Virus record (IMG/VR): IMGVR_UViG_3300035703_000006
Location: 124,001 to 188,000 of that record
Direction: 5' to 3' (one strand)
DNA: 64,000 bases
Below the pieces are notes generated by a model, which was given only the letters and a program-made list of their open reading frames with translations, was not told the origin of the DNA and ran no database searches. Shown piece after piece: positions 38,511 through 61,500 of the stretch (position 1 is the stretch's first letter; every line of letters begins with the position of its first letter). The position numbers and the translations under genes are program-made.

Positions 38511-41500
38511 ATGGCAGATAAAAGTTTCGGTTTAAATCAATTAAATTTTACTGGAATAGCAGGAACTTCATTAATTGAAAGTGAGAGTGGGTTGCAGATA
38601 AATTCACCTTCAGTTTCTATTAGTACTGATCTTTCTATTGGTGGAAAGGTTAATTCTAATTTAATTATTTCAAGTTCTTATTCTGTTGGCATTGGTTCTA
38701 CTCAACCACAACAAAAACTTGATGTTGTAGGAAATATAAACGTCTCAGGTTCCATAACCGCAACTTCTTTTGTCGGTTCTGGGACCAATCTCACTGGAGT
38801 AGCAAGAAATACCATAACAGCAATTGATGAGAATATTTATTATTATCCAATCTTTACTCCGTCAAATGCAAGTGCTGGAACTTATTCAACAATTGCAATA
38901 CCATCAGATAAAATTACTTATAATCCATCTGGTTTGATTGGAATTGGAACCAGTACTCCAAATTATAATATAGATGTTGTTGGGACTGGAAGATTTACAG
39001 GAAATTTAATTGCATCAACATTTATAGGTAGTTTAACTGGTACAGCAACCACTGCTTCCAGTTTAACGTCAACAGCAAGTGTCAATACATCAGGCATTAT
39101 AACTGCTTCTAGTTTTGTAGGTAACTTAACAGGTACAGCAACTGCAGCAGTTGGTTTAGGCACAACATCAAGTATTAATACTTCTGGTATTATAACTGCT
39201 TCTACTTTTGTAGGTAACTTAACAGGTACAGCAACTACAGCAACTTCTCTTGCCGATGCTTCTAATATTACCACAGGAACTATTAGTAGTTCTAGACTTA
39301 GTGGTTCTTATGGTATTTCTATAACAGGAACAGCAACTTCTCTTGCCGATGCTTCTAATATTACCACAGGAACTATTAGTAGTTCTAGACTTAGTGGTTC
39401 TTATGGTATTAATATTACTGGAACAGCAAATACTCTTGCTGATGCAGCAAACATAACTACTGGTACTATTAGTAGTTCTAGATTATCAGGGAGTTATGGA
39501 ATTTCTATAACAGGAACAGCAAATACTCTTGCTGATGCAGCAAACATAACTACTGGTACTATTAGTAGTTCTAGATTATCAGGGAGTTATGGAATTTCTA
39601 TAACAGGAACAGCAAATGCTCTTGATGATGCAGCAAACATAACTACTGGTACTATAAATTCATCAAGACTTAGTGGTTCTTATGGCATCAATATTACAGG
39701 AACAGCAGCTACAGCAACTACAGCACTTGGTGTATCAACAACAATTAATATCAACACTTCAGGTATCATAACTGCCACAACTTTTAGAGTTGGGACTAGT
39801 GCAACTGAATCAATTGGAATCACCACAAATATTATTAATGGTGGAAATTTATTACTTATAAATCCTGCTACAATTGGAGTTTCTACAGGAACAGTAAGGA
39901 TACTTGGAAACTTAATTGTTGAAGGAACTACATCTACTACTCAAGAATTAGTTTTAACTTCTAGTGATAAGCTCATTGCAATTGCAAGTACAGTTGGTAC
40001 TATTATTGATTTAGATGGGGCAGGAATAGGTATAGGATCTACATCAATAAGAAAGTTTATAAGATGGAATTATGGTTCAAGTTCTTTAAAATCTTCTGAA
40101 AACTGGAATTTAGATTCAGGAAAAGCATATCAAATCAATGACACTTCGGTTCTTACATCAACTGCCTTAGGTTCTGGTGTTACTATATCAAGTCTTAGAA
40201 GTGTTAGTTCTGGAATCATAACTGATAGAACGGAACTCACTTCAGGTCAAGTTTCTTCTGGTGATTATATATTAATTTACGACGTAAGTGATCCCACAAA
40301 CTTGAAGAAAGCAACAATACAAAATGCTGCACTTCAGGGACTTCAGGGAACACAGGGCACTCAAGGTGCTCAAGGACTTCAGGGAACACAGGGCACTCAA
40401 GGTGCTCAAGGACTTCAGGGAACACAGGGCACTCAAGGTGCTCAAGGAACACAAGGAACACAAGGAACACAAGGTCTTCAGGGTACTCAAGGTACACAAG
40501 GGACACAAGGTCTTCAGGGTACTCAAGGTACACAAGGGACACAAGGTCTTCAGGGTACTCAAGGTACACAAGGGACACAAGGTCTTCAGGGTACTCAAGG
40601 TACTCAGGGAACTCAAGGTACACAGGGAACTCAAGGAACACAGGGTACTCAAGGAACTCAAGGTACACAGGGAACTCAAGGTACACAGGGTACTCAAGGT
40701 CTCCAAGGTTTACAGGGCACACAGGGAACTCAAGGTACTCAAGGTCTCCAAGGAACTCAGGGCACTCAAGGTACTCAAGGAAGACAGGGAACTCAAGGAA
40801 GACAGGGAACTCAAGGTCTTCAGGGAACTAGTGGATCTAATGGAACTAGTGGTTCTTCTAATTGGATTCCAGTTTTAGTTAATGTAACGCAAGATTCTTC
40901 AAATCCATCAACATTTACAAAAACTGGAGCTGGAGGAACTGATGCAAATTGGGATGCTTCAGTTTATTCAGAGCAAGGTTTTGTTCTTGGTGCTTATGTG
41001 TCCACAAAAATATCATCAACAAGTGGAAGTGCCATAATTGGATTAGGAACTAATCCATCATTATCAAATGACACACTTATCAATTACGGATTATATCTTG
41101 ATAGTGGAACTTTGAAATCTATTGAAAATAACTCTCAAACTGGTCTTGGGACAACTTATGATATAACTGACGTTTTATCAGTTACTTATGATGGTGCAAA
41201 CGTTAGATATTATAAAAATTCATCTTTATTGAGAACTGTTTCTCGTTCTTTTGGTGATGCTTTATATTTGGATAGTTCTATCTATAGTACAGGTCTTGCC
41301 TTTAACAATCTTGTTTTTGGTCCCATGGGACCTCAGGGTACTCAAGGTCTCCAAGGTACTCAAGGAACTCAAGGTCTTCAGGGACTTCAAGGTACACAGG
41401 GAACTCAAGGAACTCAGGGAACTCAGGGAACTCAGGGAACTCAAGGTACACAGGGAACTCAAGGTCTCCAAGGTTTACAGGGAACTCAAGGAACTCAAGG

Positions 41501-42662
41501 TACTCAAGGAACTCAGGGTACTCAAGGAACTCAGGGTACTCAAGGAACTCAGGGTACTCAAGGAACTCAGGGTACTCAAGGAACTCAGGGTACTCAAGGA
41601 ACTCAGGGTACTCAGGGTCTCCAAGGTCTCCAAGGTTTACAGGGAACTCAAGGTACTCAAGGAACTCAAGGAACTCAAGGTACGCAGGGAACTCAAGGTC
41701 TCCAAGGTTTACAGGGAACTCAAGGTACTCAAGGAACTCAAGGTACTCAAGGAACTCAAGGTACTCAAGGAACTCAAGGTACTCAAGGTCTCCAAGGTTT
41801 ACAGGGAACTCAAGGTACTCAAGGAACTCAAGGAACTCAAGGAACTCAAGGTACACAGGGAACTCAAGGTACACAGGGAACTCAAGGTACACAGGGAACT
41901 CAAGGTACTCAAGGTCTCCAAGGTCTCCAAGGTTTACAGGGAACTCAAGGAACTCAAGGTACACAGGGAACTCAAGGTACACAGGGTACTCAAGGTACTC
42001 AAGGTTTACAAGGAACTCAAGGTACTCAAGGTCTCCAAGGTTTACAGGGAACTCAAGGAACTCAAGGAACTCAAGGAACTCAAGGAACTCAAGGAACTCA
42101 AGGAACTCAAGGAACTCAAGGAACTCAAGGAACTACTGGACCTGTGGCAGGTTCTGCAAATCAGATTGTTTACAAAGATTCATCAAATAATCCAACCAGT
42201 TCAAGTAGTTTGAGTTATATCGGCCCAGTTTCTGGAATCGGAACTCTAGGAATTGGAACCATCATTACAATCAAGCATAATGATACTTTAAATTCTGGAA
42301 CTTTAACTTTTGAGGGGTCTGCAGGTCAATTATTCACAATCACAAATAATCTCACTAGTGGTTCTATATTCTCAGTGGCAGATTCTTCTGGGATTCCCAG
42401 TATAGATGTAAATGCCGACGATACTGTTCTTTTAGCACCTTATAATGGAAATGTTGGTATAGGAACCACATTGCCACAAGCAAGAGTTCATATTGTTGGT
42501 AATACATTAATTACTGGTATTACAACTGTAGGTCTTGCAGATACTTCAACCCCCCCAAATAATTCTCAATTGAGTTTTGAACTTACTAGTAATACTAATC
42601 TAAGAATTAAAGTTCGTGGTACAGATGGAGTATTAAGATCAGCAAACATTACTCTTTCTTGA
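38511..42662 (+). CDS. Collagen-like tail fibre protein, 1383 aa
   Basis: 31-aa repeats, two G-X-Y blocks, an internal beta-rich domain, C-terminal LRIKVRGTDGVLRSANITLS. Confidence 0.88.
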   Translation: MADKSFGLNQLNFTGIAGTSLIESESGLQINSPSVSISTDLSIGGKVNSNLIISSSYSVGIGSTQPQQKLDVVGNINVSGSITATSFVGSGTNLTGVARNTITAIDENIYYYPIFTPSNASAGTYSTIAIPSDKITYNPSGLIGIGTSTPNYNIDVVGTGRFTGNLIASTFIGSLTGTATTASSLTSTASVNTSGIITASSFVGNLTGTATAAVGLGTTSSINTSGIITASTFVGNLTGTATTATSLADASNITTGTISSSRLSGSYGISITGTATSLADASNITTGTISSSRLSGSYGINITGTANTLADAANITTGTISSSRLSGSYGISITGTANTLADAANITTGTISSSRLSGSYGISITGTANALDDAANITTGTINSSRLSGSYGINITGTAATATTALGVSTTININTSGIITATTFRVGTSATESIGITTNIINGGNLLLINPATIGVSTGTVRILGNLIVEGTTSTTQELVLTSSDKLIAIASTVGTIIDLDGAGIGIGSTSIRKFIRWNYGSSSLKSSENWNLDSGKAYQINDTSVLTSTALGSGVTISSLRSVSSGIITDRTELTSGQVSSGDYILIYDVSDPTNLKKATIQNAALQGLQGTQGTQGAQGLQGTQGTQGAQGLQGTQGTQGAQGTQGTQGTQGLQGTQGTQGTQGLQGTQGTQGTQGLQGTQGTQGTQGLQGTQGTQGTQGTQGTQGTQGTQGTQGTQGTQGTQGTQGLQGLQGTQGTQGTQGLQGTQGTQGTQGRQGTQGRQGTQGLQGTSGSNGTSGSSNWIPVLVNVTQDSSNPSTFTKTGAGGTDANWDASVYSEQGFVLGAYVSTKISSTSGSAIIGLGTNPSLSNDTLINYGLYLDSGTLKSIENNSQTGLGTTYDITDVLSVTYDGANVRYYKNSSLLRTVSRSFGDALYLDSSIYSTGLAFNNLVFGPMGPQGTQGLQGTQGTQGLQGLQGTQGTQGTQGTQGTQGTQGTQGTQGLQGLQGTQGTQGTQGTQGTQGTQGTQGTQGTQGTQGTQGTQGTQGTQGTQGLQGLQGLQGTQGTQGTQGTQGTQGTQGLQGLQGTQGTQGTQGTQGTQGTQGTQGTQGLQGLQGTQGTQGTQGTQGTQGTQGTQGTQGTQGTQGTQGTQGLQGLQGLQGTQGTQGTQGTQGTQGTQGTQGLQGTQGTQGLQGLQGTQGTQGTQGTQGTQGTQGTQGTQGTQGTTGPVAGSANQIVYKDSSNNPTSSSSLSYIGPVSGIGTLGIGTIITIKHNDTLNSGTLTFEGSAGQLFTITNNLTSGSIFSVADSSGIPSIDVNADDTVLLAPYNGNVGIGTTLPQARVHIVGNTLITGITTVGLADTSTPPNNSQLSFELTSNTNLRIKVRGTDGVLRSANITLS
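39241..39705 (+). repeat. 93-bp (31-aa) tandem repeat x5
   Basis: A(T/N)(S/T/A)L(A/D)DA(S/A)NITTGTI(S/N)SSRLSGSYGI(S/N)ITGT; units start 39241, 39334, 39427, 39520, 39613. Confidence 0.92.
40338..40859 (+). repeat. Collagen-like G-X-Y block (58 triplets; GTQ/GLQ/GAQ)
   Basis: 9-bp degenerate tandem repeat. Confidence 0.95.
41319..42143 (+). repeat. Collagen-like G-X-Y block (about 91 triplets; GTQ/GLQ)
   Basis: 9-bp degenerate tandem repeat. Confidence 0.95.
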
Positions 42663-42666
42663 TGAC

Positions 42667-42695
42667 TTGACATTAAAAGGTTTTTGTGCTAAAAT
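42667..42695 (+). promoter_or_regulatory. sigma70-type (early) promoter
   Basis: TTGACA(42667-72)-17 nt-TGc-TAAAAT(42690-95). Confidence 0.8.
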
Positions 42696-42719
42696 ATTAG
42701 AGTACTGAGTAACATCAAA

Positions 42720-42893
42720 ATGCAAATTAGTCGTGAAACTCTTCGGGAACTTCAGGGAATGCAAGAAGACATTGCATCCCATTTCACCGAGGAGTTTTTT
42801 CCTATCAGTGGAGAAACTTATTGGACTTGTGTGCAGTGCCTTGCGGAAGCAAAATTGGCAGAACTTCGTGGTGAATTGACATATTCGAGTTGA
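42720..42893 (+). CDS. Hypothetical protein, 57 aa (not in ORF track)
   Basis: MQISRETLRELQGMQEDIASHFTEEFFPISGETYWTCVQCLAEAKLAELRGELTYSS*; directly downstream of the promoter. Confidence 0.75.
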   Translation: MQISRETLRELQGMQEDIASHFTEEFFPISGETYWTCVQCLAEAKLAELRGELTYSS

Positions 42894-42923
42894 ACTCTAA
42901 ATATAGAAAATAGGGTTCGTTCT

Positions 42924-43196
42924 ATGAAGTACCGCATAGACACTACGTACTGTTGGTATAATTGTGGAACAGAAATCGTTCTTATGTATTTTATAAATGG
43001 AATTCCATTTACATTTGATGAGTTACCACATTCTGGAATGCACACTACAGAAATTGTGGAACACGCAAATAATGAATTGTCATATGAACCAGAAGATTTA
43101 TATCAATCTTCTTATTATTTGATGCTTGAAGAATGCCATCCACTTATGTTTGAATTGGAATTGGAAAATCCAGAACTGCTACCCTGCGATGACTAA
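42924..43196 (+). CDS. Acidic conserved-type cyanophage protein
   Basis: LMYFINGIPFTFDELP...YLMLEECHPLMFELELENPE. Confidence 0.75.
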   Translation: MKYRIDTTYCWYNCGTEIVLMYFINGIPFTFDELPHSGMHTTEIVEHANNELSYEPEDLYQSSYYLMLEECHPLMFELELENPELLPCDD

Positions 43197-43307
43197 AACC
43201 AAAATTGACTTTTAATTGCAAAAAGGGTGCAAAAAATTTCCCGCAAAATTTTTTGACCTAAGGTTTTTGTCTAAATACAACTATAAAAGATTTATAGTGC
43301 TAATAAA

Positions 43308-46300
43308 ATGCCTCTGTCAAGATTAGAGAATTTTTTAAAAAATGCTGAAGGAAATATTCTTTACGTAAATCCATCAGATTTTGATGCTACAGATAGTTAC
43401 GAAAATCAAGGCAATTCTTTAACTCGTCCATTCAAGACAATTCAAAGAGCATTAATAGAAGCTGCAAGATTTTCATATCAAAGTGGCAGAAATAATGATA
43501 GGATCGACAGAACGACTATATTAGTTTATCCGGGAACTCATTATATTGACAATAGACCTGGTTTTTCAATCCAAAAGCAAGGTGCTAACGCAATTTATAA
43601 AAAAAGAACTGGGACATCTACTTGGTCTGAGGTTAATTTACCAGAACTTAATGATAATACAAATTATGACATTTTAGATACAAATAACGATTTATATAAA
43701 TTTAACTCAGTTCTTGGTGGTGCAATTTTACCTCGTGGAACCTCAATTATTGGATATGATTTAAGAAAAACAAAAATTCGTCCTCTTTACGTTCCAAATC
43801 CAGAAGATTCCTCTGTTGAAAATACAAGTATTTTTAATGTAACTGGTACTTGTTACTTCAGTACCTTCACATTTTTAGATGCAGATCAAACAAAGACGGT
43901 ATTTAGAGATTATACTGATAATCGTTTTGTCCCTAATTTTTCACACCATAAGGTAGTTTCGTTCGCTTATGCTGATGGTGTAAATAAAGTTGCTCTTGGA
44001 ACAGAGCAGACTGATTTGACCGACCTTGACATGTATTATTATAAGGTCGCAAGGGCATATGGTGATATCACTGGAAGAGGAGTTGTTGATTATCCATCTC
44101 TTACTGACTTTGAACCATCCAAAGATGAATTTAGAATTGTTGGAGAATTACAAGCAAATCCACTTGGTATTTCAAATATTAGTGGTGGTGATGGGGTCAC
44201 GCAAGCAACAAATGTAATTACAGTTACGACAAAAAATCTTCAAACAGGAGAAGAAATCCCTCACGGACTTTTTGTTGATAGTCCAGTATTAATTTCTGGA
44301 ATTACTACAGATGCTGCAACATTTAATGGATCTTTTACAGTTAGAGAAGTTGTTGGATTATCCACTTTTACTTACACTTCAACCTCTTCACCGACAAATC
44401 CCAACCCACAAGTTGCGAATTATGAAACTGGTATCGTAACAATTGAGGCAGATAGTGTAAGTTCTGCATCTCCTTATGTATTTAATTGTTCAATCCGTTC
44501 TGCATATGGATTGTGCGGAATGTGGGCAGATGGCAATAAAGCAGATGGTTTTAAAAGTATGGTTGTTGCCCAGTTTACTGGGGTATCTCTACAAAAAGAC
44601 GATAATGCTTTCATTATTTACAATAAAACCACAGGAAAATATGAAGGTAATGATATCTTAGCATTAACAAGTAATGAAAGACCATTACACATAAATGGTA
44701 ATGCAATTTACAAACCAGATTATGAAAGTTATCATATTCGTGTCTCAAATAATGGTTTCGTTCAGTGCGTTTCTATCTTTGCTATTGGTTTTGCAAAACA
44801 TTTTATAACTGAATCTGGTGGTGATATGAGCATCACCAACTCAAACTCAAATTTTGGTGCAATTTCTCTTGAATCTGTTGGATATAGAAATGAATCATTC
44901 GATAGAGATGATGTTGGTTATATCACTCACATTATACCACCTAAAGAAGTAGATGAACCAGAAACTAATATTAATTGGTTACCACTTGATGTATCAAAAA
45001 CTATTTCAGTAGGTTCTGTAGAAAAATTATATCTTTATAATTACAAAGATAAAGAATTTTCACCATCAAAAGACGTAGATGGATTTAAAATTGGTGCAAA
45101 GATAAGTGATAAATTAAATCTGAATATAACAATTGGAACTGCACAAACTGTTTATAGTTCTCCAATATTGATGCCAGTTTCCTCTGGAGTTGGAGTTACT
45201 GCAAGAAAGTCATATCAAGTAACTAGAACTGCTGGCAATTTAAATAGTATCTCTAATAATGTTTTAACTTTAAATACTAATCATCAATTAATTAATGGAG
45301 AGAGTGTTAGAATTTTTTCAGATACTGGTGAAGTTCCAAATGGAATTTCAGTAAATACAGTTGCGTATGCAATTACAACTGGATTAGCAGCAAATCAAAT
45401 CAAACTCGCTTATTCATTAAATGATGCAATTGCACAAAATGAAATAAAAGGAATTAATGATAGGGGTGGAATTCTTACTATTGTAAGTTCAGTAACTGAT
45501 AAAAAACCTGGAGAAATTGGAAGTCCTATACAATATGATGATGCAAATGGACAATGGTACATTTTAAGCAGTAATTCATATGACAATCAAATCTATTCTT
45601 CCATTGTTGGATTTGGAACAACATCGTTAGGGAACGAAACTTCATCTACATTTTTAAAAAGAAAATTAGATAATCGTGCCATTCAAGATAGAATTTATAA
45701 AATAAGATATGTAGTCCCAAAAGAGTTCACTAATGCAAGACCACCACAAGCAGGATTTGTATTACAAGAATCAAAAAGTGTAGGAATTAGTTCTATTTCT
45801 TTTAATTATAATCAAGAAATTACTAATTTAACTCCACCAGCATATTTAAGAAATGAAAAAATTGTAACAAACGCAGTAGTTGGTGCTTTATCTGGAGGAA
45901 AACAAACAGTAACTATTACGACAGAAAAACCTCATAAGTTTTTTGTTGGAGATAAAGTTAAGATTCAAAGAGTTAAGAGTACAAATAACCCCTCTGCAGT
46001 TGGAATTACTTCATCTTATAATGGATCATATGTAATTAATTCTGTACCAAGTTCTAAAACTTTTACTTATGAAATTTCTGGAGTAAAAGTAAATCCAGGA
46101 ACATTTTCTACTTTAATTAATGAAAGAGATACAAATCAAGAAAGAAAAGATATACCTCTAGTTTCTAGAGAGCAATATAAGAATGATTTTTACATTTATA
46201 GAGTAGATACAATCAGACCTCATATTCCTGGAGTAAATGGTCAAGATGGCGTATATAATTTAATTATTTTAGCATCCAACATCTCTCCGTCTTCGGATAT

Positions 46301-49300
46301 AGGATACAATCTTTCAAGCAAAGCATTTAATCAAGATGTAAGGAATTTATATCCACAAATTGATCGTGATAATTTCAATTCAGACCCGTCAGAAGTAGTT
46401 AGTTACGCTGATGCATCTGTAATAGGAAAAGTTGTAACTGATGATAAAAGAAAATCTATTACAAGAGAAACAATAAACTCTTTTATAAAAAATTCAAATA
46501 TTGGATTTGGAATTACTGGAGTAGTTGCATCAGGAACTGGATATACAACAATCACATTACATACAAATGTTGAGCACAATTTAAATTCAATTAAATCAAT
46601 AACCATAAAAGATGCTGTTTCGGGGATATCTTCTGGTGCTGGATATGGTAATACTACAATATACTCTGCATCTTTGGTTGGAGGAACTGGTCAGGATGCT
46701 TCTCTTTATGTTCCTGTTGTTGGTTCAACTGGAACAATCAATGCAAATTCAATTAAAATAGTTGATCGAGGATCAGTTTATTCTGTAGGAGACGTTTTGG
46801 ATGTCTCTGGTCCATCCGGGATTACTCCAACAATATATGCAAAGGCAGAAGTCCTGGAAATCAATAATAATGTTGGAGATGCCCTAGAAATACGTGGATT
46901 TAACACCACAGAAATGGATGGTGTTTATAAAATTATAAGTGTTCCATCTGCAAAGTCTATTCAAATTTATGTTCCAAGCGGAGTTCCATCATATCAATCA
47001 AATACGAATGGAAGAATTCCTTTGGCAATGTTATCATCTAAAGGAGTTGGAATTAATTCATTCAGATTTGATAATGTTAATACTGGAATAGTTACAGTTA
47101 CAACAGAAATTGCTCACGGATTGTTAAGGGGAAATAAATTTACAATTGTTGGTAGTGGACATACAATTTATGACAAAACATTTGTTGTAAAAGAGAATGT
47201 TGGATTGACCACATTTACCTTTAATGTTGGTATTGTAACACAAACCAAAATATCAACCACTGGAACATTACTTAAGCACTCTTTAAGTGCTAATGAATTA
47301 GTTCTGACAAGGGGCGAGGACAATCTTGGATCTAGAGCATCTTATTTTTATGCTGGAATCACAACAACCATTTCTGCATCAATAAGTGTATCGGATCTAA
47401 CAATTACATTGACAAGTTCCAAAGGATTTGAACGTGGAGATTATATTGCCATAAACAATGAAATTATTCGTCTTGCAAATTCAACATCTACGAATACTTT
47501 TAATGTTCTTCGTGGTGCATTCAGTACATTTAAAACTACTGCAGAAGCAGGAACTCAAGTTAAGAAAATAAGTATAATGCCAATGGAGGTTCGTAGACCT
47601 TCATTTATGAGAGCATCTGGCCATACTTTTGAATATCTTGGATATGGACCAGGAAACTATTCTACTGGTATGCCACAAAAGCAAACTAGAATTTTAACAG
47701 AAGATGATGTTCTTGTATCGCAGGCAAGAAAGCAAAAAGGTGGAGTAGTCGTTTATACTGGAATGAATGATGTTGGTGAATTTTATTCTGGTGCTAAAAA
47801 GTTAAGTTCCTCAACTGGTGAAGAAAAAATTGTTGAAGCACCAATTATCAGTTATACAGGAGACGATGCTGAAGGGACTAACACAAATAAACTAGATGTA
47901 ACTTTTGATAATATTTTGGCAAGAGGAAGAATTACTATTGAAGGTGGTGAAGGAGCAAGAGAAACAAGTCAATTTTATGGTCCAGTAAGTTTTAGTAAAA
48001 AAGTTGTAAGTACTTCTGATGAAGGTATCATATCCAAAAATCTTTATATCAGTGGGGATACATCATCTAATAAGTTAATCACAGTTGGATTATCAACACC
48101 AACTAGTGCAAATTTAGTAAATAGTGGTAATATATCTCTTAAATCACTTCCAAATGATGGTTATATTGGTCAAGTTTATATTGATAATGAATGGAAAAAA
48201 TTTGGTTTAATTAGCCAATCTAAAGACATTTTAGACCTTAAGGTTGATAAAATTGGAATTGGAAATTCCAATTTATTTTTAAATGCAGCAGATTCTGGAG
48301 TAAATAATGCAATATTTTATGTTGGAGGAAAGGCAAAGTTTAGAGATGTCGTATTTTCTGGAAATGTTGACATTGAATCTGGAGTCACATTAGATAATGT
48401 TACTTTTAATAGTATAAATGTTAGAAAAACTGCTTTCTTTAGTGGTGTTGGTGGAGGTGGAACTTCTTATGCAATTTATGTTTATGATCCAGGAACTTTA
48501 GTTCCTTTTGGTGCTGGAACAACAAATGCCCCAAGACTTAGAAGTAGATTCTATGATTTAGAAGTTGCTGGAGTTTCTACATTTACAAGTGGTCTTGTTG
48601 GAATAGGAACTACAACCTTTACAGGTACTTCCAATCAATTGCTGCAGGTAAATGGAGGTGCTTACTTTAGTGGTTCTGTCGGAATTGGAATCACAAATCC
48701 ATCTGAAAAACTTGTTTCATTTGGTGATGTTGGAATACATACGAGTTTAAATTTATATTCACCAACTCAACAAAAAAGAGCATCATTACAAGCAGTAGAG
48801 GCAACACAAAAGTATAAATCTGGACTAGTTATTAATGTTCCTGATGGTGATGAGATTGCTATCTCTGATGGGGAAACTACTAATGTAGTTATAACTGGTT
48901 CTGGTTCTGTTGGAGTTGGAACAACAAATCTATCATCAAAACTACAAGTACACGGAACAATTGGAATATCTTCTTCTGGAGATACTGAACAAATTGTTTC
49001 TGGTGGAAGAACAAAACTTTCATCTAATAGCACTACTGGATTTATTATTAATCAAACTGACTCTAATGATATAATTTTACAAAACCAAGGAACTGAAAGA
49101 CTTAGAGTTGGTGCTGCAAGAACAGCAACTTATACAAGCAATAGTAATGATAGTGACTTAAAGGGAAGTCACTTTAAACTTAAAAACACAGGAATAGGAG
49201 ATGTTATTTTATCTTGGTTTGCAGATGACGCAAGCAATCAAAGATGGTATTCTGGAATTGATGTAAGTGATTCTTATTCTTGGAAATTAGCAAGTCCAAA

Positions 49301-51772: not shown

Positions 51773-51784
51773 GGAGGTAATCTA

Positions 51785-53163: not shown

Positions 53164-53334
53164 ATGACTAAAGAAGAAATGACGGAGACTCTAACAAAAA
53201 AAGCAATTAAAATTCGTGATGAACTTCTTGCTCTTGAGCAAGAATTCAATGTCAAAAAAGAAGAGTTCCTTAAAGTTCAAGGAGCACTCGAAGCACTAAG
53301 TAATTTGGAAAATGAAGAGAAAGAAGAAGAATAA
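53164..53334 (+). CDS. Small coiled-coil protein, 56 aa (not in ORF track)
   Basis: MTKEEMTETLTKKAIKIRDELLALEQEFNVKKEEFLKVQGALEALSNLENEEKEEE*. Confidence 0.7.
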   Translation: MTKEEMTETLTKKAIKIRDELLALEQEFNVKKEEFLKVQGALEALSNLENEEKEEE

Positions 53335-53337
53335 ATA

Positions 53338-53364
53338 AAAGGGATAAGGATATTATCCCTTTTA
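53338..53364 (+). terminator. Intrinsic terminator (perfect 10-bp stem)
   Basis: aaagggataa-ggata-ttatcccttt. Confidence 0.8.
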
Positions 53365-53460
53365 TAATTTAAAAAATGAAGTTCCTACTATTACTTTAGT
53401 AATTATAGAAACAAGGAAAAAATATCCATAAACTCTGAGGTTATTTTCTTCTAATACCAG

Positions 53461-55248
53461 ATGGATAATATTAAAGTAAGAGTAGGAACAAATAATGCTA
53501 TAAAGGTAATTTCATCAAATTTTGCTGATGTAGTACAGATTAATTCTGATTATGTAGTTTCAAATATCTTATATGTCACAGAAGACGGAAATGATTCCAA
53601 CACAGGAAAAAAACTCGGAGAAGCAAAAGCAACTATCGCAGCAGCAGTTGGAATTGCAACAGAGGGAACTGTTATTAAAGTTAGTGCTGGAACTTACATA
53701 GAAAATAATCCAATTTCTTTACCAAAACAAATCAGTATTGTTGGAGACAATTTAAGAGAAGTTACAATTATTCCACAGAATGCAAATGCTGATTTATTTT
53801 ACGTCAATAATGGAAATTATATCTCAAACGTATCATTTTCTGGAAGTTTGAATGCAGGAAAGGCAGTCTTTGCATTTGACCCAACCAAACCAACTTATAT
53901 CAATCAATCACCTTACGTTCAAAATTGTACTAATTTTATTCCAAATAGTATTGGATTAAAAGTCGATGGGTCTAAAGCAATTGGACCAACTAAAAGTATG
54001 GTCTTAGACTCATATACTCAATATAATCAAAATGGAATTGGTGCTTCAATTACCAATGAAGGGTATGCACAATTAGTGTCCATGTTCACTATTTGTAATG
54101 ATACTGCAGTTTATTGTGGTTCTGGTGGCGGTTGTGATTTGACCAATTCCAATTCATCCTTTGGAAATTATGCTTTAGTTGCCGATGGAGTAAGTGCTAA
54201 AAAATATACAGGAATTGTTACTGTAGAAGCATCTGAAAATTCAGATACTTTTGTTTTAAATTTAAATACACCAACACTAAATGTTACAAATGCAGTTTAT
54301 GATAATGTGACTGGATTGACAACAATCACAGTCAGTCAAAGTCATAATTTTAATGTTGGAATGGGAGTTTCAATAAGTAATCTTATTTTCTCTTGTTCTT
54401 CGGGTGGTGGAGTTGCTGCTTTCCCATCAGGAAACAATGGTTATATTTTTGAAGTTGCAAATATTCCAACATCAACCTCCTTTGAAGTATATGTTGGGGT
54501 TTCCACAATTCAACATACTTATGTTTCCGGAGGAACTACAAAAGTAAATGCTGTTCGTCCATTTGATGGGCAAGTTGTTTATTTTGGACAATCCTATTAT
54601 ACAGTTGGAAGTGTGAACGTAAGTTCTGGTGGAACTGGTTATACTGGAAATACATCCGTTATATTTTCTTCACCCGAAACCTCTTGGGGGATACCTGCTT
54701 CTGGAATTGCTGAAGTTAAAAATGGATCTGTAACTAAAGTTGAAATTGTATCTTCAGGAAGAGGGTATGGTTCAACTCCTCCAACATTAACTTTTGGTTC
54801 TCCAAATGTTGGAATAAATACTGCAATAGGAGTTGCTAATTTGATTCCATCTTATTATACAATTCAAAGTTCTACCCCTATTGTTTCTGGAATTTGTACA
54901 ATCACTTTGAATGATAGTGTTCCATTTAATGTTGGTATTGGCACTACGACTTTCTTCTTTAAGCAAAGTCGCATTTTGGCATCAGGTCATTCATTTGAAT
55001 ATATTGGGTCAGGAACAAATATTGCATCTGCTTTACCTGTAACTGGTGGTGTTGCAATTCAAGAAAACGAAATTGATATGAGAAATGGTGGTCTTGTAGT
55101 GTATACTTCAACCGACCAATCTGGAAATTTTAGAATAGGAGATGGTGTTACAATCAATCAACAAACAGGAACAATTAGTGGAACATTTTATTCTAAGAGT
55201 TTGTTTTCATCTATGACACCATTCATTTTAGCATTAGGAGGAGAATAA
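53461..55248 (+). CDS. Tail fibre anchor protein (module B), paralog of the C-terminal half of 33231..36662
   Basis: PYVQNCTNFIPNSIGLKVDG, VLDSYTQYNQNG, ASGHSFEYIG, VYTSTDQSGNFRIG. Confidence 0.85.
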   Translation: MDNIKVRVGTNNAIKVISSNFADVVQINSDYVVSNILYVTEDGNDSNTGKKLGEAKATIAAAVGIATEGTVIKVSAGTYIENNPISLPKQISIVGDNLREVTIIPQNANADLFYVNNGNYISNVSFSGSLNAGKAVFAFDPTKPTYINQSPYVQNCTNFIPNSIGLKVDGSKAIGPTKSMVLDSYTQYNQNGIGASITNEGYAQLVSMFTICNDTAVYCGSGGGCDLTNSNSSFGNYALVADGVSAKKYTGIVTVEASENSDTFVLNLNTPTLNVTNAVYDNVTGLTTITVSQSHNFNVGMGVSISNLIFSCSSGGGVAAFPSGNNGYIFEVANIPTSTSFEVYVGVSTIQHTYVSGGTTKVNAVRPFDGQVVYFGQSYYTVGSVNVSSGGTGYTGNTSVIFSSPETSWGIPASGIAEVKNGSVTKVEIVSSGRGYGSTPPTLTFGSPNVGINTAIGVANLIPSYYTIQSSTPIVSGICTITLNDSVPFNVGIGTTTFFFKQSRILASGHSFEYIGSGTNIASALPVTGGVAIQENEIDMRNGGLVVYTSTDQSGNFRIGDGVTINQQTGTISGTFYSKSLFSSMTPFILALGGE

Positions 55249-55250
55249 GA

Positions 55251-55580
55251 ATGGCACTACCATTAAATGTATTCCAGACAGTTACCGCAGTTGTATCTAC
55301 AAGTCCAACGGAAGTTTATACTGCTCCAGTCGGGTATACTGGGGTTGTTCTTTTAGCACAAGTTGCAAATATTGGAGCATCATCTCAAGATATTACAATG
55401 CTCCATCGTAGAAGTGTAACTGATACTGAGATGTTAAAGGCATATCCAGTTGCGGGAAATGATACAATAAATCTTCTTTCTGGAAAATTGGTTCTTGAAA
55501 GTGGAGATAAATTAGTTATATCTGGTAGTAATGCAACTGATCTGAAACTTGTTGCAAGTATTTTAGAAACACTTAACTAA
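55251..55580 (+). CDS. Small virion adaptor-like protein (module B)
   Basis: Paralog of 36664..37017. Confidence 0.8.
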   Translation: MALPLNVFQTVTAVVSTSPTEVYTAPVGYTGVVLLAQVANIGASSQDITMLHRRSVTDTEMLKAYPVAGNDTINLLSGKLVLESGDKLVISGSNATDLKLVASILETLN

Positions 55581-55592
55581 TATTAAATAAAA

Positions 55593-58500
55593 ATGGCAAA
55601 GTACCTCAGCAATCGTCAAAAGAACTTTAAGATTGGTATAAGTTCTTATACAGAAGGAAAAACGGTACTTGAAGTTTCTGGAAATGTTGGCATTGGAACA
55701 ACAAATTCTGGTGGAAGAAGTTTATATGTAATTGGAGATGGTGAATTTACTGGCATTTTAACTGCAAATAGAATTTTTAGTTCAGTTTATGGTGAATTTA
55801 TAGGAGGAATAACAGGAACAAATATTGTAGGTACTTCATTATCTATTTCTGGAATTTCAACTCTCGGTATTACAAGTATTTCTCAACTTTATGTTTCTGG
55901 AATCACTACTTTAGCATCTGATGGTGGTATTACAACAACTGGTGGTAATTTATATGTTGGTCAGAATTTACAAGTTGCAGGAACTTCTAATTTTATAGGA
56001 ACTGCAATTTTTAGAGGTGGGACCATAGGAATTGGTGATTCGATTTCTGATAATATAGATGTTGGTGGTGAATTTATATCAAATTTAGTTCCAAGTGATG
56101 ATGGACTTTATGATCTTGGAATTGATGGAAAAAGATGGAGAAATGCAAAATTTTCTGATTTAACTACAACTACAGATCTTTATGTTTCTGGTGTTGGAAC
56201 TATACAAAACTTAGTTACAGCAAATGCAACATTAACTAATATTAATTCTACTGGAATTAGTACATTTGGGATTACTGAAATATCAGTTAATAGTTCTTCT
56301 AACGCATTAACGATCACTCAAACTGGATCTGGAAATGCTTTAGTTGTTCAACCAAATGCTAATGGTTTAGTTGTCACTGATAATGGATTTGTTGGAATTA
56401 GAAATTTAACTCCTGGAGAAGCACTTCAAGTTGGTGGAAATTTAAGAATAGGGTCTTCAGAGTCAAATTACATTGCATTCCGAGGGACTAGTGGAGATGG
56501 TGCCGGAGAATTTGATCATACTTATATTGGCGAAAGAGTTTATGAACCAGGCACAGAATTATCTGAACTTTTTATTTTTAAAGGAAATGATCCTGATACT
56601 CCATCGGTAGGTCCAGATAGAATTAGATTAGCCGCTGCAGAAATTAGATTAGATACTTATACTATAACCACACCATTATATGGTCCTTTTGAAGATGCTG
56701 CTACTTCAGTAAATTTAGACACAAGAGTCATTATAAAGGACCATGGATTTGTTGGCATAGGGACAACAGAACCATCAACACTTCTTGATGTATATGGTGG
56801 ATTTAATGTAAGTGGCATTGGAACTATAGCAACTTTAGATGTCACTACAGGTACTATTGATTACTTATCGGGAACTAATGTCTTTTGTAGTGGTATTACT
56901 ACCTTAGGCACTTTAGGTGTCACTGGTCTTACTACAACTCAAAATCTTCAAGTTATTGGAGTATCAACACTTGGAGTTACAAGTGCTACGAATCTAATAA
57001 CACAACAACTAAATGTCTCTGGAATTTCTACTTTTATTGGTGGAATTACTGGTACAATTTCTACAGCAACAAAATTAGAAAACTCTAGAACATTTGAAAT
57101 TACTGGTGATATTGTTGCATCACCAATTAGTTTTGATGGAACTGGTAATGTATCTTTAGCAGCAACAATACAACCAAATTCTGTTGCTTTGGGTGGTGAT
57201 ACTACTGGAGATTATGTTCAGATAATTTCTGGAACTGCAAATCAAATCACAATAACTGGTGGAACTGGAGAAAGTTCTACTCCAGTAGTTGCTTTTGCTC
57301 CAAATCCAACAATTCCAGGAAATGTAACAATTGGAAATGATTTGCAGGTTAATAATAATTTAAATGTAACAGGTAATATTACTGTTGGTGGAACAACTGG
57401 TTATATTATTGTTGAAGATTTTAGAGTCACTGATGCTGATATAACTCTTGGTTTTACGACTGATTCTTATGGAAATGATAATTCTACCGATACTACCGCA
57501 AATCATGGTGGTATTGCGATTGCGTCAACTGAAGGAAATCCTTTAGTTCAACTTGTTAATGTTGCAATTGGTGAATCATTACCTGCCACATACAAGAAAT
57601 TTATGTGGTTCAAGGCAGGTGCTTTTTCTGGACTGAATACAGATGCCTGGTTGAGCAATTATGCAATTGGTATTGGATCTACTCAGTTTCCATCAGGAAC
57701 AATACTTTCTGTTGGAAATGTTCAATTCAATCAAAATGATTTATCAGTTATAAGAAATATTAATGCTTCTGGTGTTGTAACCGCAACTAGATTCATTGGT
57801 ACTGCAACTAGTCTTGATATTGATGGTCTCACAACAATTGCTGATCCCCAAGGTAGTGATTTTATTGCACTTTATGATGTAAGTGGAGCAGTTGTAGGTA
57901 AAGCAACAATACAGAATGCAGCACTTCAGGGCACTCAAGGTACTCAAGGACTTCAAGGAACTCAGGGAACACAAGGAACTCAAGGAACCCAAGGTCTTCA
58001 GGGCACTCAAGGCACTCAAGGAACTCAAGGCACTCAGGGAACCCAAGGTCTTCAGGGAACCCAAGGTCTTCAGGGCACTCAAGGAACTCAAGGAACTCAA
58101 GGAACTCAAGGAACTCAAGGAACTCAAGGCACACAGGGTACTCAAGGAACTCAAGGAACTCAAGGTCTCCAGGGTACACAGGGCACACAGGGTACTCAAG
58201 GTACACAGGGTCTCCAGGGAACTCAAGGAACTCAAGGCACACAGGGCACTCAAGGTACACAGGGTCTCCAGGGAACTCAAGGAACTCAAGGCACACAGGG
58301 CACTCAAGGAACTCAAGGTCTCCAGGGAACTCAAGGAACTCAAGGAACACAGGGCACTCAAGGACTTCAAGGAACTCAAGGAACTCAAGGAACTCAAGGA
58401 ACACAGGGAACTCAAGGTACTCAAGGAACACAGGGCACACAGGGAACTCAAGGTCTCCAAGGAACTCAAGGAACTCAAGGAACTCAAGGAACTCAAGGTC

Positions 58501-61500
58501 TCCAGGGTACTCAGGGAACTCAAGGTACACAAGGAACTCAAGGTTTACAAGGACTTCAAGGAACTCAAGGAACACAGGGTACTCAAGGTACTCAAGGTAC
58601 TCAAGGAACTCAAGGTTTACAAGGTCTTCAGGGAACTCAAGGTCTTCAGGGAACTCAAGGTCTTCAGGGTACACAAGGAACTCAAGGAACTCAAGGAACT
58701 CAAGGAACTCAAGGTACTCAAGGTACACAAGGAACTCAAGGTACTCAAGGTACTCAAGGTACTCAAGGTACTCAAGGTACTCAAGGTACTCAAGGTACTC
58801 AGGGAACTACTGGACCAGTAGCAGGTTCTGCAAATCAAGTTGTTTACAAAGATGGTTCCAATAATCCCGCAGGTTCTAATAATTTAACTTTTGATGGAAC
58901 TGCTCTTTATGTAAATCAAATTACTGGACCAACAGAACTCATAATAGACCCAACTGCAATTGGAGATAATACAGGTGCAGTTAGAATTAAAGGCGATTTA
59001 TATGTTGATGGCAATCAAACTTATATTAATTCTACAACTATTGAACTTGCTGATTTCAATGTTGGTGTTGCTACAACAATAGGAACTAATTTACTTCTTG
59101 ATGGTGCTGGTATTGGAATTGGTTCTACTGGAATTCGTAAAACTTTAACTTATGATTATATAAATGATTCATTAAAATCGAGTGAAAATGTTAATATTGC
59201 TATAGGAAAAACTTATAAAATTGATGGAACTGATGTACTAAGTTCTACGACTCTTGGTGCTGGTGTAACTATTTCAAATATAAGAAGTGTAAATCCAGGA
59301 TTAATTTTTGATAGAACTACATATTCACCAACTTCAGATGATTATTTGTTAATTTATGATAATGCCGATAATCAACTGAAAAAAGCAACAATTCAAAATG
59401 CTGCTTTACAGGGTATTCAAGGTACTCAAGGTCTTCAAGGAACTCAAGGAACACAGGGTACTCAAGGTTTACAAGGTCTTCAGGGAACACAGGGCACTCA
59501 AGGAACTCAGGGAACTCAAGGTACTCAGGGAACTCAAGGTACACAAGGAACTCAAGGTTTACAAGGACTTCAAGGAACTCAAGGTACACAAGGAACTCAA
59601 GGTTTACAAGGACTTCAAGGAACTCAAGGTACACAAGGAACTCAAGGTACTCAAGGTACACAAGGAACTCAAGGTACTCAAGGTACTCAAGGTACTCAAG
59701 GTACTCAAGGAACTCAAGGTACACAAGGAACTCAAGGTACTCAAGGTACACAAGGAACTCAAGGTACTCAAGGTACTCAAGGTACTCAAGGTACTCAAGG
59801 AACTCAAGGTTTACAAGGTCTTCAGGGAACTCAAGGTCTTCAGGGAACTCAAGGTCTTCAGGGAACTCAAGGTACACAAGGAACTCAAGGTACACAAGGA
59901 ACTCAAGGTCTTCAAGGTCTTCAAGGACTTCAAGGCACTCAAGGAACACAGGGTACTCAAGGAACACAGGGTACTCAAGGTACTCAAGGACTTCAAGGTA
60001 CTCAAGGTACACAGGGAACTCAAGGAACTCAAGGTACACAGGGAACTCAAGGAACTCAAGGTACACAGGGAACTCAAGGTACACAGGGAACTCAAGGTAC
60101 ACAGGGAACTCAAGGAACTCAAGGAACTCAAGGTCTTCAAGGAACTCAAGGAACACAGGGTACTCAAGGTTTACAAGGTCTTCAGGGAACACAGGGCACT
60201 CAAGGAACTCAGGGAACTCAAGGTACTCAGGGAACTCAAGGTACACAAGGAACTCAAGGTTTACAAGGACTTCAAGGAACTCAAGGTACACAAGGAACTC
60301 AAGGTTTACAAGGACTTCAAGGAACTCAAGGTACACAGGGCACTCAAGGTACACAGGGCACTCAAGGTACACAGGGCACTCAAGGTACTCAAGGTACTCA
60401 AGGTACTCAAGGCACTCAAGGTACTCAAGGTACTCAAGGTACTCAAGGTACTCAAGGCACTCAAGGTACTCAAGGCACTCAAGGACTTCAAGGAACTCAA
60501 GGACTTCAAGGAACTCAAGGAACACAGGGAACTCAAGGTCTCCAAGGCACACAGGGCACACAGGGAACTCAAGGTCTCCAAGGTACTCAAGGAACTCAAG
60601 GAACTCAAGGTCTCCAGGGTACTCAAGGTACACAGGGAACTCAAGGAACTCAAGGTCTCCAGGGTACTCAGGGAACTCAAGGTACACAAGGAACTCAAGG
60701 TTTACAAGGACTTCAAGGAACTCAAGGAACACAGGGTACTCAAGGTACTCAAGGTACTCAAGGAACACAGGGCACACAGGGAACTCAAGGTCCCCAAGGT
60801 ACTCAAGGAACTCAAGGAACTCAAGGAACTCAAGGTCTTCAGGGAACTCAAGGAACTCAAGGAACTCAAGGAACTCAAGGTACACAAGGAACACAGGGTA
60901 CTCAAGGAACACAGGGTACTCAAGGTACTCAAGGTACTCAAGGAACACAGGGCACACAGGGAACTCAAGGTCTCCAAGGTACTCAAGGAACTCAAGGTCT
61001 TCAGGGAACTCAAGGAACTCAAGGAACTCAAGGTACACAAGGAACTCAAGGTATCACTGGGCCAGTAGCAGGTTCTGCAAATCAAATTATTTTCAAAGAC
61101 ATCTCCAATAATCCAACTGGTTCTGGTAATTTAACTTTTGATGGATCTAATCTTTATGTCGGTGGAAATGTAACGATTGGTGGTACTAGTGTTCTTATTG
61201 CTGCCAATACTTTAACTGTAAAAGATAAAGATATTATTGTTGGACTTGCAACAACTGCTGGTGGAGTTGTAATTTCCAATGACACAACAGCAAATCATGG
61301 TGGTATTGCTGTTGCTTCTACCGAAGGAAATCCACTAATTGATATTAATGCTGGTGTTGGTACTGATGATATTCCATCCACATATAAGCAACTTATGTGG
61401 ATTAAGGCAGGCACTTTTACTGGTTTGAATACTGATGCGTGGATATCAAACTATGCAGTTGGTGTTGGTACTTTTGATCTTTCCAATGGAGTAAGATTTG

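What the first reader, a model, noticed from the sequence alone, without database searches (positions are those of the whole stretch)
40263..61120. Collagen blocks are bracketed by conserved entry and exit caps: a portable collagen cassette
Seen: the entry cap D(Y/F)I.(I/L)YD......K(K)ATIQNAALQG occurs three times (40263, 57858, 59340), across two different genes. The exit cap GPVAGSANQ(I/V)(V/I)(Y/F)KD.SNNP also occurs three times (42138, 58812, 61059). Established: collagen triple helices need adjacent trimerisation/registration domains. Inference: these short caps are previously unnamed nucleation and registration motifs that allow arbitrary lengths of proline-free G-X-Y to be dropped into beta-structured fibres.
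Basis: partly seen in the sequence, partly recalled or inferred. Interest (0 to 1): 0.62.

Follow-up and report, generated by a model that had tools for sequence, protein, structure and literature searches.

The report
Fibre-module joints flanking phage collagen spacers
Two short conserved motifs do sit at the start and end of collagen-like stretches in two tail-fibre genes of a marine cyanophage, but both are general joints between fibre modules that also occur without collagen, so the collagen looks like a length-adjustable spacer grown at those joints.

Summary
The entry motif occurs at 40263, 57858 and 59340, and the exit motif at 42138, 58812 and 61059. They lie in two tail-fibre genes of a 247-kb T4-like cyanomyovirus, and none are expected by chance. 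Conservation is at protein level: 44 different DNA versions encode the same exit 9-mer.

- The close form of the exit motif nearly always follows G-X-Y in uncultured cyanophage contigs (83 of 84 contexts).
- Those same tracts start with at least six other junction types. The entry cap starts only 2 of 44.
- Two of the window's five tracts use other junctions.
- Both motifs belong to wider phage-fibre motif families found mostly without collagen. The entry core lacks it in 26 of 45 contexts and the N-type exit core in 106 of 110.
- Cultured phage S-SCSM1 carries a full exit motif with no collagen.

Between the same joint types the spacer runs from 0 to 255 triplets.

A trimer model of a natural mini-cassette scored 0.86 (best control 0.00), and its most confident inter-chain contacts lie in the entry unit.

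Neither motif matches anything in Pfam, NCBIfam or the PDB by sequence. My verdict is trimeric module-boundary motifs with collagen as an expandable linker, a new variant of a known kind.

The parts
38511..42662 (+). P0001, a 1383-aa tail-fibre gene. It holds N-terminal repeats, a beta module, the entry unit, collagen A, a globular insert, collagen B, the exit cap and a C-terminal beta module.
   Evidence: ORF list and translation. PF01391 matches at E 6e-69. PHROG tail-fibre families match.
40212..40340 (+). Entry unit 1. The conserved unit extends about 17 aa upstream (GIITDRTELT...).
   Evidence: Regex. An HMM built only from collagen-free instances aligns from ITDRTELT to ATIQN at E 1.9e-5.
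40338..40859 (+). Collagen tract A: 58 uninterrupted G-X-Y triplets with no proline. It has no exit cap and runs straight into the insert.
40860..41318 (+). A 153-aa all-beta globular insert between tracts A and B. A SPRY-like fold is a lead only.
   Evidence: phrog_19691 matches at E 5e-13. The Atlas feature hit scores 0.88 to SPRY clusters. The AF2 monomer is poor, pLDDT 39. The insert is absent from orthologue L009.
41319..42146 (+). Collagen tract B: 92 triplets. It has no entry cap and starts directly after the insert.
42138..42218 (+). Exit cap 1 (K-type).
55593..64000 (+). P0002, a giant tail-fibre gene with 2802 aa inside the window. It ends 124 nt beyond the window and has a C-terminal Peptidase_S74 chaperone domain.
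   Evidence: PF01391 matches at E 4e-212 and PF13884 at E 1.1e-12.
57858..57932 (+). Entry cap 2 (DFIALYD...VGKATIQNAALQG variant).
57930..58820 (+). Collagen tract 1 of P0002: 99 triplets.
58812..58892 (+). Exit cap 2 (K-type). It is also the start of the inter-collagen module.
   Evidence: Alignment A8.
58893..59339 (+). Core of the inter-collagen beta module (type 1: ...IIDP..IGDNTG.VRIKGDLYVDG...LLDGAGIGIGS...). The same core occurs without caps or collagen in S-SKS1.
   Evidence: tblastn gives 57.5% identity to an S-SKS1 structural protein. The PHROG matches stop before the entry cap.
59340..59414 (+). Entry cap 3.
   Evidence: The collagen-free HMM scores E 7.4e-4.
59412..61067 (+). Collagen tract 2 of P0002: 184 triplets.
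61059..61139 (+). Exit cap 3 (K-type). It is followed by a type-2 beta module (...TANHGGIAVASTEG...).
61719..61796 (+). Alternative N-side junction of the third tract (TLNF.G.G...ATITV..IQ type). This type is itself conserved in other contigs.
   Evidence: The same type precedes collagen in L057, L062, L078, L095 and L113. In S-SCSM1 and L106 it precedes 0 and 30 triplets respectively.
61797..63632 (+). Collagen tract 3 of P0002: 204 triplets (GTQ/GTT). One register break follows, before a short GLQGLQG tail.
63657..63773 (+). Alternative C-side junction of the third tract (Gly run, then ..LTVIDDTTTNATWYV.. type). It is conserved in other contigs.
   Evidence: The same type (NGG[VF]T[VI]..D.[ST]TN) closes tracts in L010, L024, L035, L049, L095, L096 and L114.
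63849..63998 (+). Start of the Peptidase_S74 intramolecular chaperone domain.
   Evidence: PF13884 matches residues 2753-2802.

Best explanation
The two 'caps' are boundary motifs of trimeric beta-structured fibre modules. The entry unit is about 40 aa: I[IT].[RQ][TS]E.., then D[YF].L[IL]YD, a turn, and LKK....N. It is the last element of the module on the N-side. The exit unit is about 27 aa: GS..Q[VI].[FY][KN], a loop, and [LF].[FY][DN]. It is the first element of the module on the C-side.

In many phages these two kinds of element are joined by a few residues or a glycine-rich linker. In this cyanomyovirus lineage the linker has expanded into proline-poor G-T/L-Q collagen of almost any length.

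Each boundary motif lies in the three-fold interface and so holds the three chains together and in register at the end of the triple helix. The C-side joint is nearly uniform while the N-side joint is very varied. P0002 and other fibres of this lineage also carry a C-terminal S74 folding chaperone, though the window's P0001 does not. I therefore infer that the helix is nucleated at the already trimerised C-side module and zips towards the N-terminus.

Shown: the motif distribution, the protein-level selection, the combinations of junction types, and the length series. Inferred: the trimer-register role, which rests on a model only, and the direction of folding.
For: Context. The window carries D1-type photosystem II genes and T4-type baseplate and tail genes, and six large fibre ORFs match PHROG tail-fibre families.

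Exit cap and collagen. Patterns without collagen letters found 403 stretches in IMG/VR, of which 319 were confirmed. In the 80 best loci, 83 of 84 unique contexts sit directly after G-X-Y, and the 84th is cut by a contig end. All HMM hits above about 14 bits follow collagen.

Varied partners. The same tracts open with at least six other conserved junction types. In the tracts that could be classified at both ends, 2 of 44 K-exit tracts open with the entry cap, and 15 of 22 entry-capped tracts close with an exit-family motif.

Not specific to collagen.
- A degenerate scan for D[YF].L.YD.....LKK gave 45 unique contexts, 26 of them without collagen, in contigs of 34-48% GC.
- An HMM built from those collagen-free instances finds the window's caps at E 1.9e-5 and 7.4e-4.
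- An HMM built only from post-collagen K-type caps finds collagen-free instances: L249 at 1.9e-5, L229 at 6.7e-5, and S-SCSM1's annotated virion tail-fibre protein at 43.5 bits, E 9e-12.
- K-type and N-type caps occupy the same position in orthologous modules, and two different module cores share the same caps (alignment A8).

Length series between like junctions, in triplets: 0 (L119, S-SCSM1), 11 (L029), 28 (L009), 30 (L106, whose upstream module is 52.6% identical to S-SCSM1's), 42-46, 99, 184-189 and 255.

Selection acts on the protein. 44 DNA versions encode GPVAGSANQ, with mean third-position identity of 0.56. The window's own copies differ at synonymous sites.

Trimer model of the natural mini-cassette P0005 in three copies.
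- Score 0.86, best control 0.00.
- That mark was reached by 21 of 30 proteins solved as pairs of one chain and by 0 of 23 solved as single chains.
- The runs agree in at least 94% of contacts and the pLDDT is at least 77.
- The least-error contacts are inter-chain, between the IISDRT, DYILFYD and QLKK segments of the entry unit.
- The G-X-Y part and both strands of the exit unit are also in the interface.
Against: No experiment bears on folding or nucleation.

The trimer score is the model's own confidence. The tool's calibration used two copies, not three, and no coordinates were returned, so the fold of the caps is not known.

AF2 monomer models were useless, with pLDDT 37-39.

The HMM built from 102 collagen-free N-type motifs did not detect the window's K-type exit caps. 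The link between the two types therefore rests on the reverse search, on positional equivalence in A8, and on S-SCSM1.

The loci examined were chosen by motif patterns. The counts describe those samples, not all phages.

Within close relatives the K-type exit cap is almost exclusively post-collagen, so a collagen-adapted subtype is not excluded.

The window's P0001 has no S74 domain, so part of the case for C-to-N folding does not apply to it.
Confidence: 0.6

Rival explanations
1. The two caps are dedicated, collagen-specific nucleation and registration elements, and together with G-X-Y they form one portable cassette.
For: Within the genome the caps occur only at collagen ends. The K-type exit cap follows G-X-Y in 83 of 84 contexts. 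The entry cap with its ATIQNAALQG tail is followed by G-X-Y in 35 of 36 loci. A natural mini-cassette of entry cap, 11 triplets and exit cap exists in L029 and models as a trimer with score 0.86 against 0.00 for the best control; 21 of 30 solved one-chain pairs and 0 of 23 solved single chains reached that mark; the runs agree in at least 94% of contacts and pLDDT is at least 77. The short lead-in AALQ before the first Gly is shared by two different entry types, so a small part of the entry cap may be collagen-specific.
Against: Both motif families occur mostly without collagen. S-SCSM1 has a full K-type cap with no collagen, at E 9e-12. L119 has the entry and exit motifs 8 residues apart. The pairing is rare, at 2 of 44 K-exit tracts. 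Two of the five tracts in the window use other junctions.
Confidence: 0.12
2. The caps are conserved mainly as DNA homology patches. They would let recombination shuffle fibre modules and collagen blocks, as proposed for conserved motifs in T-even adhesin genes (from my own knowledge), and any structural role would be incidental.
For: Fibres in the related contigs are strongly mosaic. The same caps join two different module cores and many junction combinations occur. The three exit copies in the window share a 17-nt identical stretch.
Against: Third codon positions vary freely: there are 44 DNA versions of one 9-mer, with mean third-position identity 0.56. The window's copies have synonymous differences. 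Exact DNA matches are short. Conservation tracks amino acids, including conservative swaps such as I/V and Y/F.
Confidence: 0.1
3. The caps look conserved only because the collagen blocks are recent intragenomic duplicates or gene-conversion tracts that carried their edges along.
For: The repeats are highly similar, and the collagen-coding DNA has a distinct composition (GC 0.43-0.46 against 0.34 elsewhere) and long tandem arrays.
Against: Synonymous differences lie inside the caps. The sequence immediately outside each cap differs. The same caps occur in hundreds of IMG/VR stretches and in the freshwater phage DSL-LC02.
Confidence: 0.03

Closest known systems
Collagen-like side-tail-fibre proteins EPclA-D of E. 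coli O157 prophages (Ghosh et al. 2012, PMC3368898)
   Same: These are phage fibre proteins in which one or two G-X-Y domains are 'capped' by conserved non-collagenous domains. The Col length varies in multiples of three. A repeat (Pf2) lies between two Col domains. The flanking PfN and Pf2 domains are stated not to be exclusive to collagen proteins.
   Different: No PF08400, PF06820 or PF03406 match is found here. The joints here are 25-40-aa beta-type motifs, not roughly 100-aa domains or an alpha-helical coiled coil. The tracts are far longer, up to 204 triplets here and 255 in relatives, and are almost free of proline.
T4 fibritin foldon and engineered (GPP)n-foldon constructs (from my own knowledge of the literature)
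   Same: Both are short C-terminal beta elements at the end of a trimeric phage fibre that set trimerisation and register. The foldon can nucleate a collagen helix placed N-terminal to it, which is the role I infer for the exit unit.
   Different: There is no sequence relation. The cap HMMs score below 0 bits on T4 wac even with a database size of 1. The exit unit is internal and continues into a larger module. Its fold is unknown.
Streptococcal Scl1/Scl2 V domain and other collagen trimerisation domains (review PMC8968730)
   Same: These are non-collagenous domains adjacent to bacterial G-X-Y that nucleate trimerisation. Their Thr- and Gln-rich, hydroxyproline-free helices are stabilised by hydration networks.
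   Different: The V domain is N-terminal, helical and much larger. P0003 matches NCBIfam Scl and Lcl models only through its G-X-Y stretch and far below the cut-offs.
Peptidase_S74 intramolecular chaperone of tailspikes and fibres (PF13884)
   Same: It is present at the C-terminus of P0002, of the neighbouring 2557-aa fibre, and of P0001's orthologue L009. It is a C-terminal device that drives trimer folding of the fibre (from my own knowledge).
   Different: It is a single terminal domain, not a joint repeated at each collagen end. The window's P0001 lacks it.

Membership tests
Collagen triple helix repeat (PF01391) | Long uninterrupted Gly-X-Y periodicity | tested here: met
   The tracts hold 58, 92, 99, 184 and 204 perfect triplets. 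PF01391 matches at E 6e-69 and 4e-212.
Collagen triple helix repeat (PF01391) | Three chains actually form a triple helix | not testable with these tools
   The only evidence is a model. In the three-copy fold of P0005, the G-X-Y residues of all three copies lie in the interface. The score was 0.86 against 0.00 for the best control; 21 of 30 solved one-chain pairs and 0 of 23 single chains reached that mark; contact agreement was at least 94% and pLDDT at least 77.
   The entry core lacks collagen in 26 of 45 contexts. The N-type exit core lacks it in 106 of 110. A K-type exit cap without collagen occurs in S-SCSM1 at E 9e-12 and in L249 at E 1.9e-5. The criterion is met only for the close K-type subtype in IMG/VR, at 83 of 84.
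   2 of 44 K-exit tracts open with the entry cap, and 15 of 22 entry-capped tracts close with an exit-family motif. Inside the window, two of five tracts use other junctions.
   This needs CD, SEC-MALS and refolding of constructs with and without the caps.
EPcl-type prophage collagen fibres (PfN, PCoil, PfC, Pf2) | Presence of PF08400, PF06820 or PF03406 flanking domains | tested here: not met
   Pfam scans of the whole proteins, and of the non-collagen pieces at E up to 1, list none of them.
Foldon (T4 fibritin C-terminal domain) | Sequence similarity to the fibritin C-terminal 27-30 residues | tested here: not met
   All five cap HMMs were run against T4 wac. Scores were below 0 bits and none aligned to the C-terminus.
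Foldon (T4 fibritin C-terminal domain) | Beta-hairpin propeller fold | tested here: inconclusive
   No coordinates came from the trimer job. In the AF2 monomer the entry cap shows two short strands (YLLIYD and LKKATI), but at pLDDT below 50.
T4-like cyanomyovirus tail fibre with S74 chaperone | C-terminal PF13884 domain, fibre PHROG matches, and a T4-type structural gene neighbourhood | tested here: met
   PF13884 matches P0002 at E 1.1e-12. PHROG tail-fibre families match. The gp5-like hub, the tube cap and the D1-type photosystem genes lie in the window. P0001 itself has no S74 domain.

The most novel reading that the evidence does not exclude
The entry-type and exit-type motifs would be two halves of a widespread and so far unnamed 'joint code' of phage fibres. 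In this reading they are short autonomous trimer-register elements at the end and start of beta modules. The exit unit would work like a natural foldon, unrelated to it in sequence, that nucleates proline-free collagen of any length from its C-terminal side. That would give a compact natural tag for making recombinant collagens, and a rule for reading module boundaries in unannotated fibre genes.
Probability: 0.25. Interest if true: 0.6.

Novelty: new variant of a known kind. Interest (0 to 1): 0.4.

Why it matters
Phage collagen, and non-collagenous domains that cap it, have been known since the late 1990s. Gly-X-Y runs in cyanomyovirus fibre genes were noted in 2005. The general idea is therefore not new.

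Three things are new here.
- Two short motif families that match nothing in the Pfam, NCBIfam or PDB sequence searches used here are defined, with their boundaries.
- They are shown to be general module joints rather than collagen caps.
- Natural variants carry anything from 0 to 255 triplets between the same kinds of joint.

This makes a concrete question testable: how does a proline-free G-T-Q helix hundreds of residues long get nucleated and kept in register? It also points to short natural candidates for trimerisation tags in recombinant collagen work.

It helps in reading the huge mosaic fibre genes of marine cyanophages, which decide host range. At the standard collagen rise of about 0.29 nm per residue (my own knowledge), P0002's 487 triplets would span roughly 420 nm. 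That figure is an inference.

Tried and rejected
- Megablast of the fibre region against 50,697 phage records gave no match.
- tblastn of the 48-aa entry region against cultured phages gave no match. The exit region matched only DSL-LC02 and S-SCSM1.
- The word-index protein search restricted to the exit region of P0001 gave only 2 hits among 43 candidates. A 50-aa region has little power against 5.8 billion sequences, so I dropped this route.
- I did not run the large representative search. A profile of about 25 conserved positions yields roughly 30 bits, which is not significant against 1.84 billion proteins. The claim also does not rest on absence of relatives.
- Pfam, NCBIfam, and PDB sequence and profile searches for both motif families found nothing meaningful. 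The weak 'Pizza' designer-protein and cohesin matches are chance matches to short words.
- A full-text search for six motif strings returned 0 papers.
- AF2 monomer folds of the insert and of the inter-collagen module had pLDDT 39 and 37 and were not usable for fold search. No fold search was run.
- The HMM from collagen-free N-type motifs did not hit the window's exit caps. The link was made through the reverse search and the orthologous alignment instead.
- The foldon resemblance I recalled from memory was tested against T4 wac and rejected at sequence level.
- I looked for an S74 remnant in the 645-nt gap after P0001 and found none.

Full report
WHAT IS THERE

The window is bases 124001-188000 of a single 247,112-bp contig with 34% GC. 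It carries two D1-type photosystem II genes, a gp5-like baseplate hub, a tail-tube cap and six large ORFs that match PHROG tail-fibre families. It is therefore the fibre region of a T4-like cyanomyovirus. The two genes in the finding are P0001 (38511-42662, 1383 aa) and P0002 (55593 to 124 nt past the window, 2802 aa within it). P0002 ends in a Peptidase_S74 chaperone domain.

THE OBSERVATION

A six-frame regex and degenerate-codon searches find exactly three entry caps (40263, 57858, 59340) and three exit caps (42138, 58812, 61059). Shuffles gave zero matches. There are no further copies anywhere in the genome, even with loose patterns.

The genome has five long G-X-Y tracts, all perfect, of 58, 92, 99, 184 and 204 triplets. 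X is mostly Thr or Leu and Y is mostly Gln, with Thr in the last tract. There are 0-3 prolines per tract.
- Only P0002 tracts 1 and 2 have both caps.
- In P0001 one entry cap and one exit cap enclose two tracts separated by a 153-aa beta-rich insert.
- The third P0002 tract starts after a TLNF.G.G...ATITV..IQ junction and ends in a Gly run followed by ..LTVIDDTTTNATWYV...

ARE THE CAPS CONSERVED FOR THEIR OWN SAKE?

The three copies differ at synonymous sites inside the identical peptide stretches. Across related contigs, 44 different DNA versions encode GPVAGSANQ and 16 encode KATIQNAALQG. Third codon positions are only 56-59% identical on average. Selection therefore acts on the protein. Recent duplication, gene conversion or DNA-homology patches do not explain the conservation.

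RELATIVES OF THE EXIT CAP

Peptide patterns that contain no collagen letters matched 403 stretches of IMG/VR, and 319 were confirmed.
- In the 80 best loci, 83 of 84 unique contexts lie directly after G-X-Y. The last is cut by a contig end.
- An HMM scan of all fetched loci found no significant hit without collagen upstream, apart from that truncated one.
- The freshwater Synechococcus phage DSL-LC02 has the same cap after its collagen, but with a different N-side junction.

The same tracts open with at least six other conserved junction types. Among them are ..GS[IV]L.STG.GVSW..[FY]AA, the TLNF.G.G type..NNEDVIITFARTGD..GEIAINHYDGKVF.., and the end of the globular insert. In the tracts that could be classified at both ends, 2 of 44 tracts closed by a K-type exit cap open with the entry cap. 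Of 22 tracts opened by the entry cap, 15 close with an exit-family motif, 3 run into the insert, and 4 end otherwise.

RELATIVES OF THE ENTRY CAP

With the full cap as query, 35 of 36 loci continue into G-X-Y. That query included the collagen-proximal tail.

A degenerate DNA scan for the core alone (D[YF].L.YD, five residues, LKK) is expected to match about once by chance in the collection, by my own estimate. It returned 45 unique contexts, and 26 have no collagen. Those lie in contigs of 34-48% GC, sometimes as two tandem copies (L145).

An HMM built only from the collagen-free instances aligns to the window's caps from ITDRTELT through ATIQN, at E 1.9e-5 and 7.4e-4. The real unit is therefore about 40 aa and is not tied to collagen. 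Only the last few residues (AALQ before the first Gly) look collagen-linked, because the same lead-in follows a different entry type as well.

THE WIDER EXIT FAMILY

Some post-collagen caps in the related contigs have Asn in place of Lys and a loop one or two residues shorter (N-type). In orthologous inter-collagen modules, K-type and N-type caps occupy the same position. Two unrelated module cores carry the same caps at both ends (alignment A8).

About a third of them follow a glycine-rich linker, often after a ..TDG.GNL.W.. motif.

The HMM built from these did not find the window's caps, which is a weakness. The reverse search did work. An HMM built only from 64 post-collagen K-type caps finds collagen-free instances at 1.9e-5 (L249), 6.7e-5 (L229) and several between 2e-3 and 1e-2. 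It also scores 43.5 bits (E 9e-12) on the tail-fibre protein of cultured phage S-SCSM1, annotated as a virion protein, where the cap follows the TLDF.G.G-type junction after eight residues with no collagen. Contig L106 has the homologous upstream module (52.6% identity over 76 aa), the same exit cap, and 30 triplets between them. In L119 an entry-type and an exit-type motif are eight residues apart.

Between like joints the spacer is 0, 11, 28, 30, 42-46, 99, 184-189 or 255 triplets.

STRUCTURE

Neither motif family matches anything in Pfam-A, NCBIfam or the PDB by sequence or profile. Six motif strings occur in no held paper.

AF2 monomer models failed, with pLDDT 37-39. In the second model the entry cap is drawn as two short strands, but at low confidence.

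I folded a three-copy model of a natural mini-cassette from L029. It comprises the end of the upstream module, the entry cap, 11 triplets, the exit cap and the start of the next module. It scored 0.86, and the best of three controls scored 0.00. That mark was reached by 21 of 30 proteins solved as pairs of one chain and by 0 of 23 solved as single chains. The runs agree in at least 94% of contacts and the pLDDT is at least 77. The calibration used two copies, so the counts hold only roughly.

The least-error contacts are between chains. They link the IISDRT segment, the DYILFYD strand and QLKK of the entry unit. The G-X-Y residues of all three copies, and the QVVYK and NFTFD parts of the exit unit, are in the interface, while most of the exit loop is not. 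This supports a trimeric in-register arrangement but does not show it.

HOW IT MOST LIKELY WORKS

The caps are the last and first elements of trimeric beta modules. Collagen has expanded at the linker between them, plausibly by slippage of the 9-bp repeat. Tandem arrays with periods of 9, 18, 27, 36, 45 and 54 nt are present.

The C-side joint is nearly uniform and the N-side joint is very varied. P0002 and other fibres of this lineage carry C-terminal S74 chaperones, though P0001 does not. I infer nucleation at the C-side module and C-to-N zipping, as in fibrillar collagens and in engineered collagen-foldon fusions (my own knowledge). A recalled resemblance to the foldon itself was tested and not found at sequence level.

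COMPARISON AND NOVELTY

Phage collagen flanked by conserved fibre domains that are not exclusive to collagen proteins, with Col lengths varying in threes, is described for E. coli prophage proteins EPclA-D (PMC3368898). Gly-X-Y in cyanomyovirus fibre ORFs was noted for P-SSM2 (PMC1079782). None of the EPcl domains is present here.

This finding is therefore a new variant of a known kind. It defines short beta-type joints that match no Pfam or NCBIfam model and no solved structure, and that turned up in no held paper, shows that they are general module boundaries, and provides a natural 0-to-255-triplet series.

Noticed in passing
window 40860-41318: A 153-aa beta-rich globular domain is inserted between two collagen tracts of P0001. 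The IMG/VR orthologue L009 lacks it and has one 28-triplet tract instead. The Atlas feature search points to SPRY-like phage clusters at 0.88, below the level the tool treats as more than a lead.
   Followed up: partly
window about 39250-39800: The N-terminal part of P0001 holds about five tandem copies of a roughly 37-aa unit (..ADASNITTGTISSSRLSGSYGI.ITGTA..), preceded by shorter ..INTSGIITAS.F.GNLTGTATTA.. repeats.
   Followed up: no
window 37023-38465, about aa 139-161: The fibre ORF just upstream of P0001 has an exit-like string (GQANQIMYHGSGNLIKAASGFVY, followed by ..GNIGIG..) with no collagen. It is conserved in L004 and L009, but its HMM score of 2.6 bits is not significant.
   Followed up: partly
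window 42663-43307 and the end of P0001: P0001 lacks the C-terminal Peptidase_S74 domain that its orthologue L009 carries. The 645-nt gap after it holds only short ORFs and no S74 remnant.
   Followed up: partly
window 63630-63660: The third P0002 tract has a single register break (..GTTGTG TQG..) after 204 perfect triplets. A short GLQGLQG tail and a run of six Gly follow.
   Followed up: no
window 40001-42000 and 58001-64000: Collagen-coding DNA has GC 0.43-0.46 against about 0.34 elsewhere, and a strong A-over-T skew. Both follow from the GGN ACN CAR codon repeat.
   Followed up: no
L029:1945-6135 (IMG/VR 3300036770_003690), also L026, L112: A second kind of collagen interruption recurs in related fibres. 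A tract ends in ..RGG[IV].Y.F.., is followed by a globular domain of roughly 110-120 aa, and the next tract begins after ..F.[RK][TS]G. The pattern repeats several times within one protein.
   Followed up: no
window 54-1088 and 3855-4916: Two ORFs both match the photosystem II D1 PHROG at E 1e-189 and 3e-171. They are presumably psbA and psbD.
   Followed up: no
window 43308-50981: A neighbouring 2557-aa fibre gene also ends in Peptidase_S74 (E 5.7e-17). It has no collagen and neither cap.
   Followed up: partly
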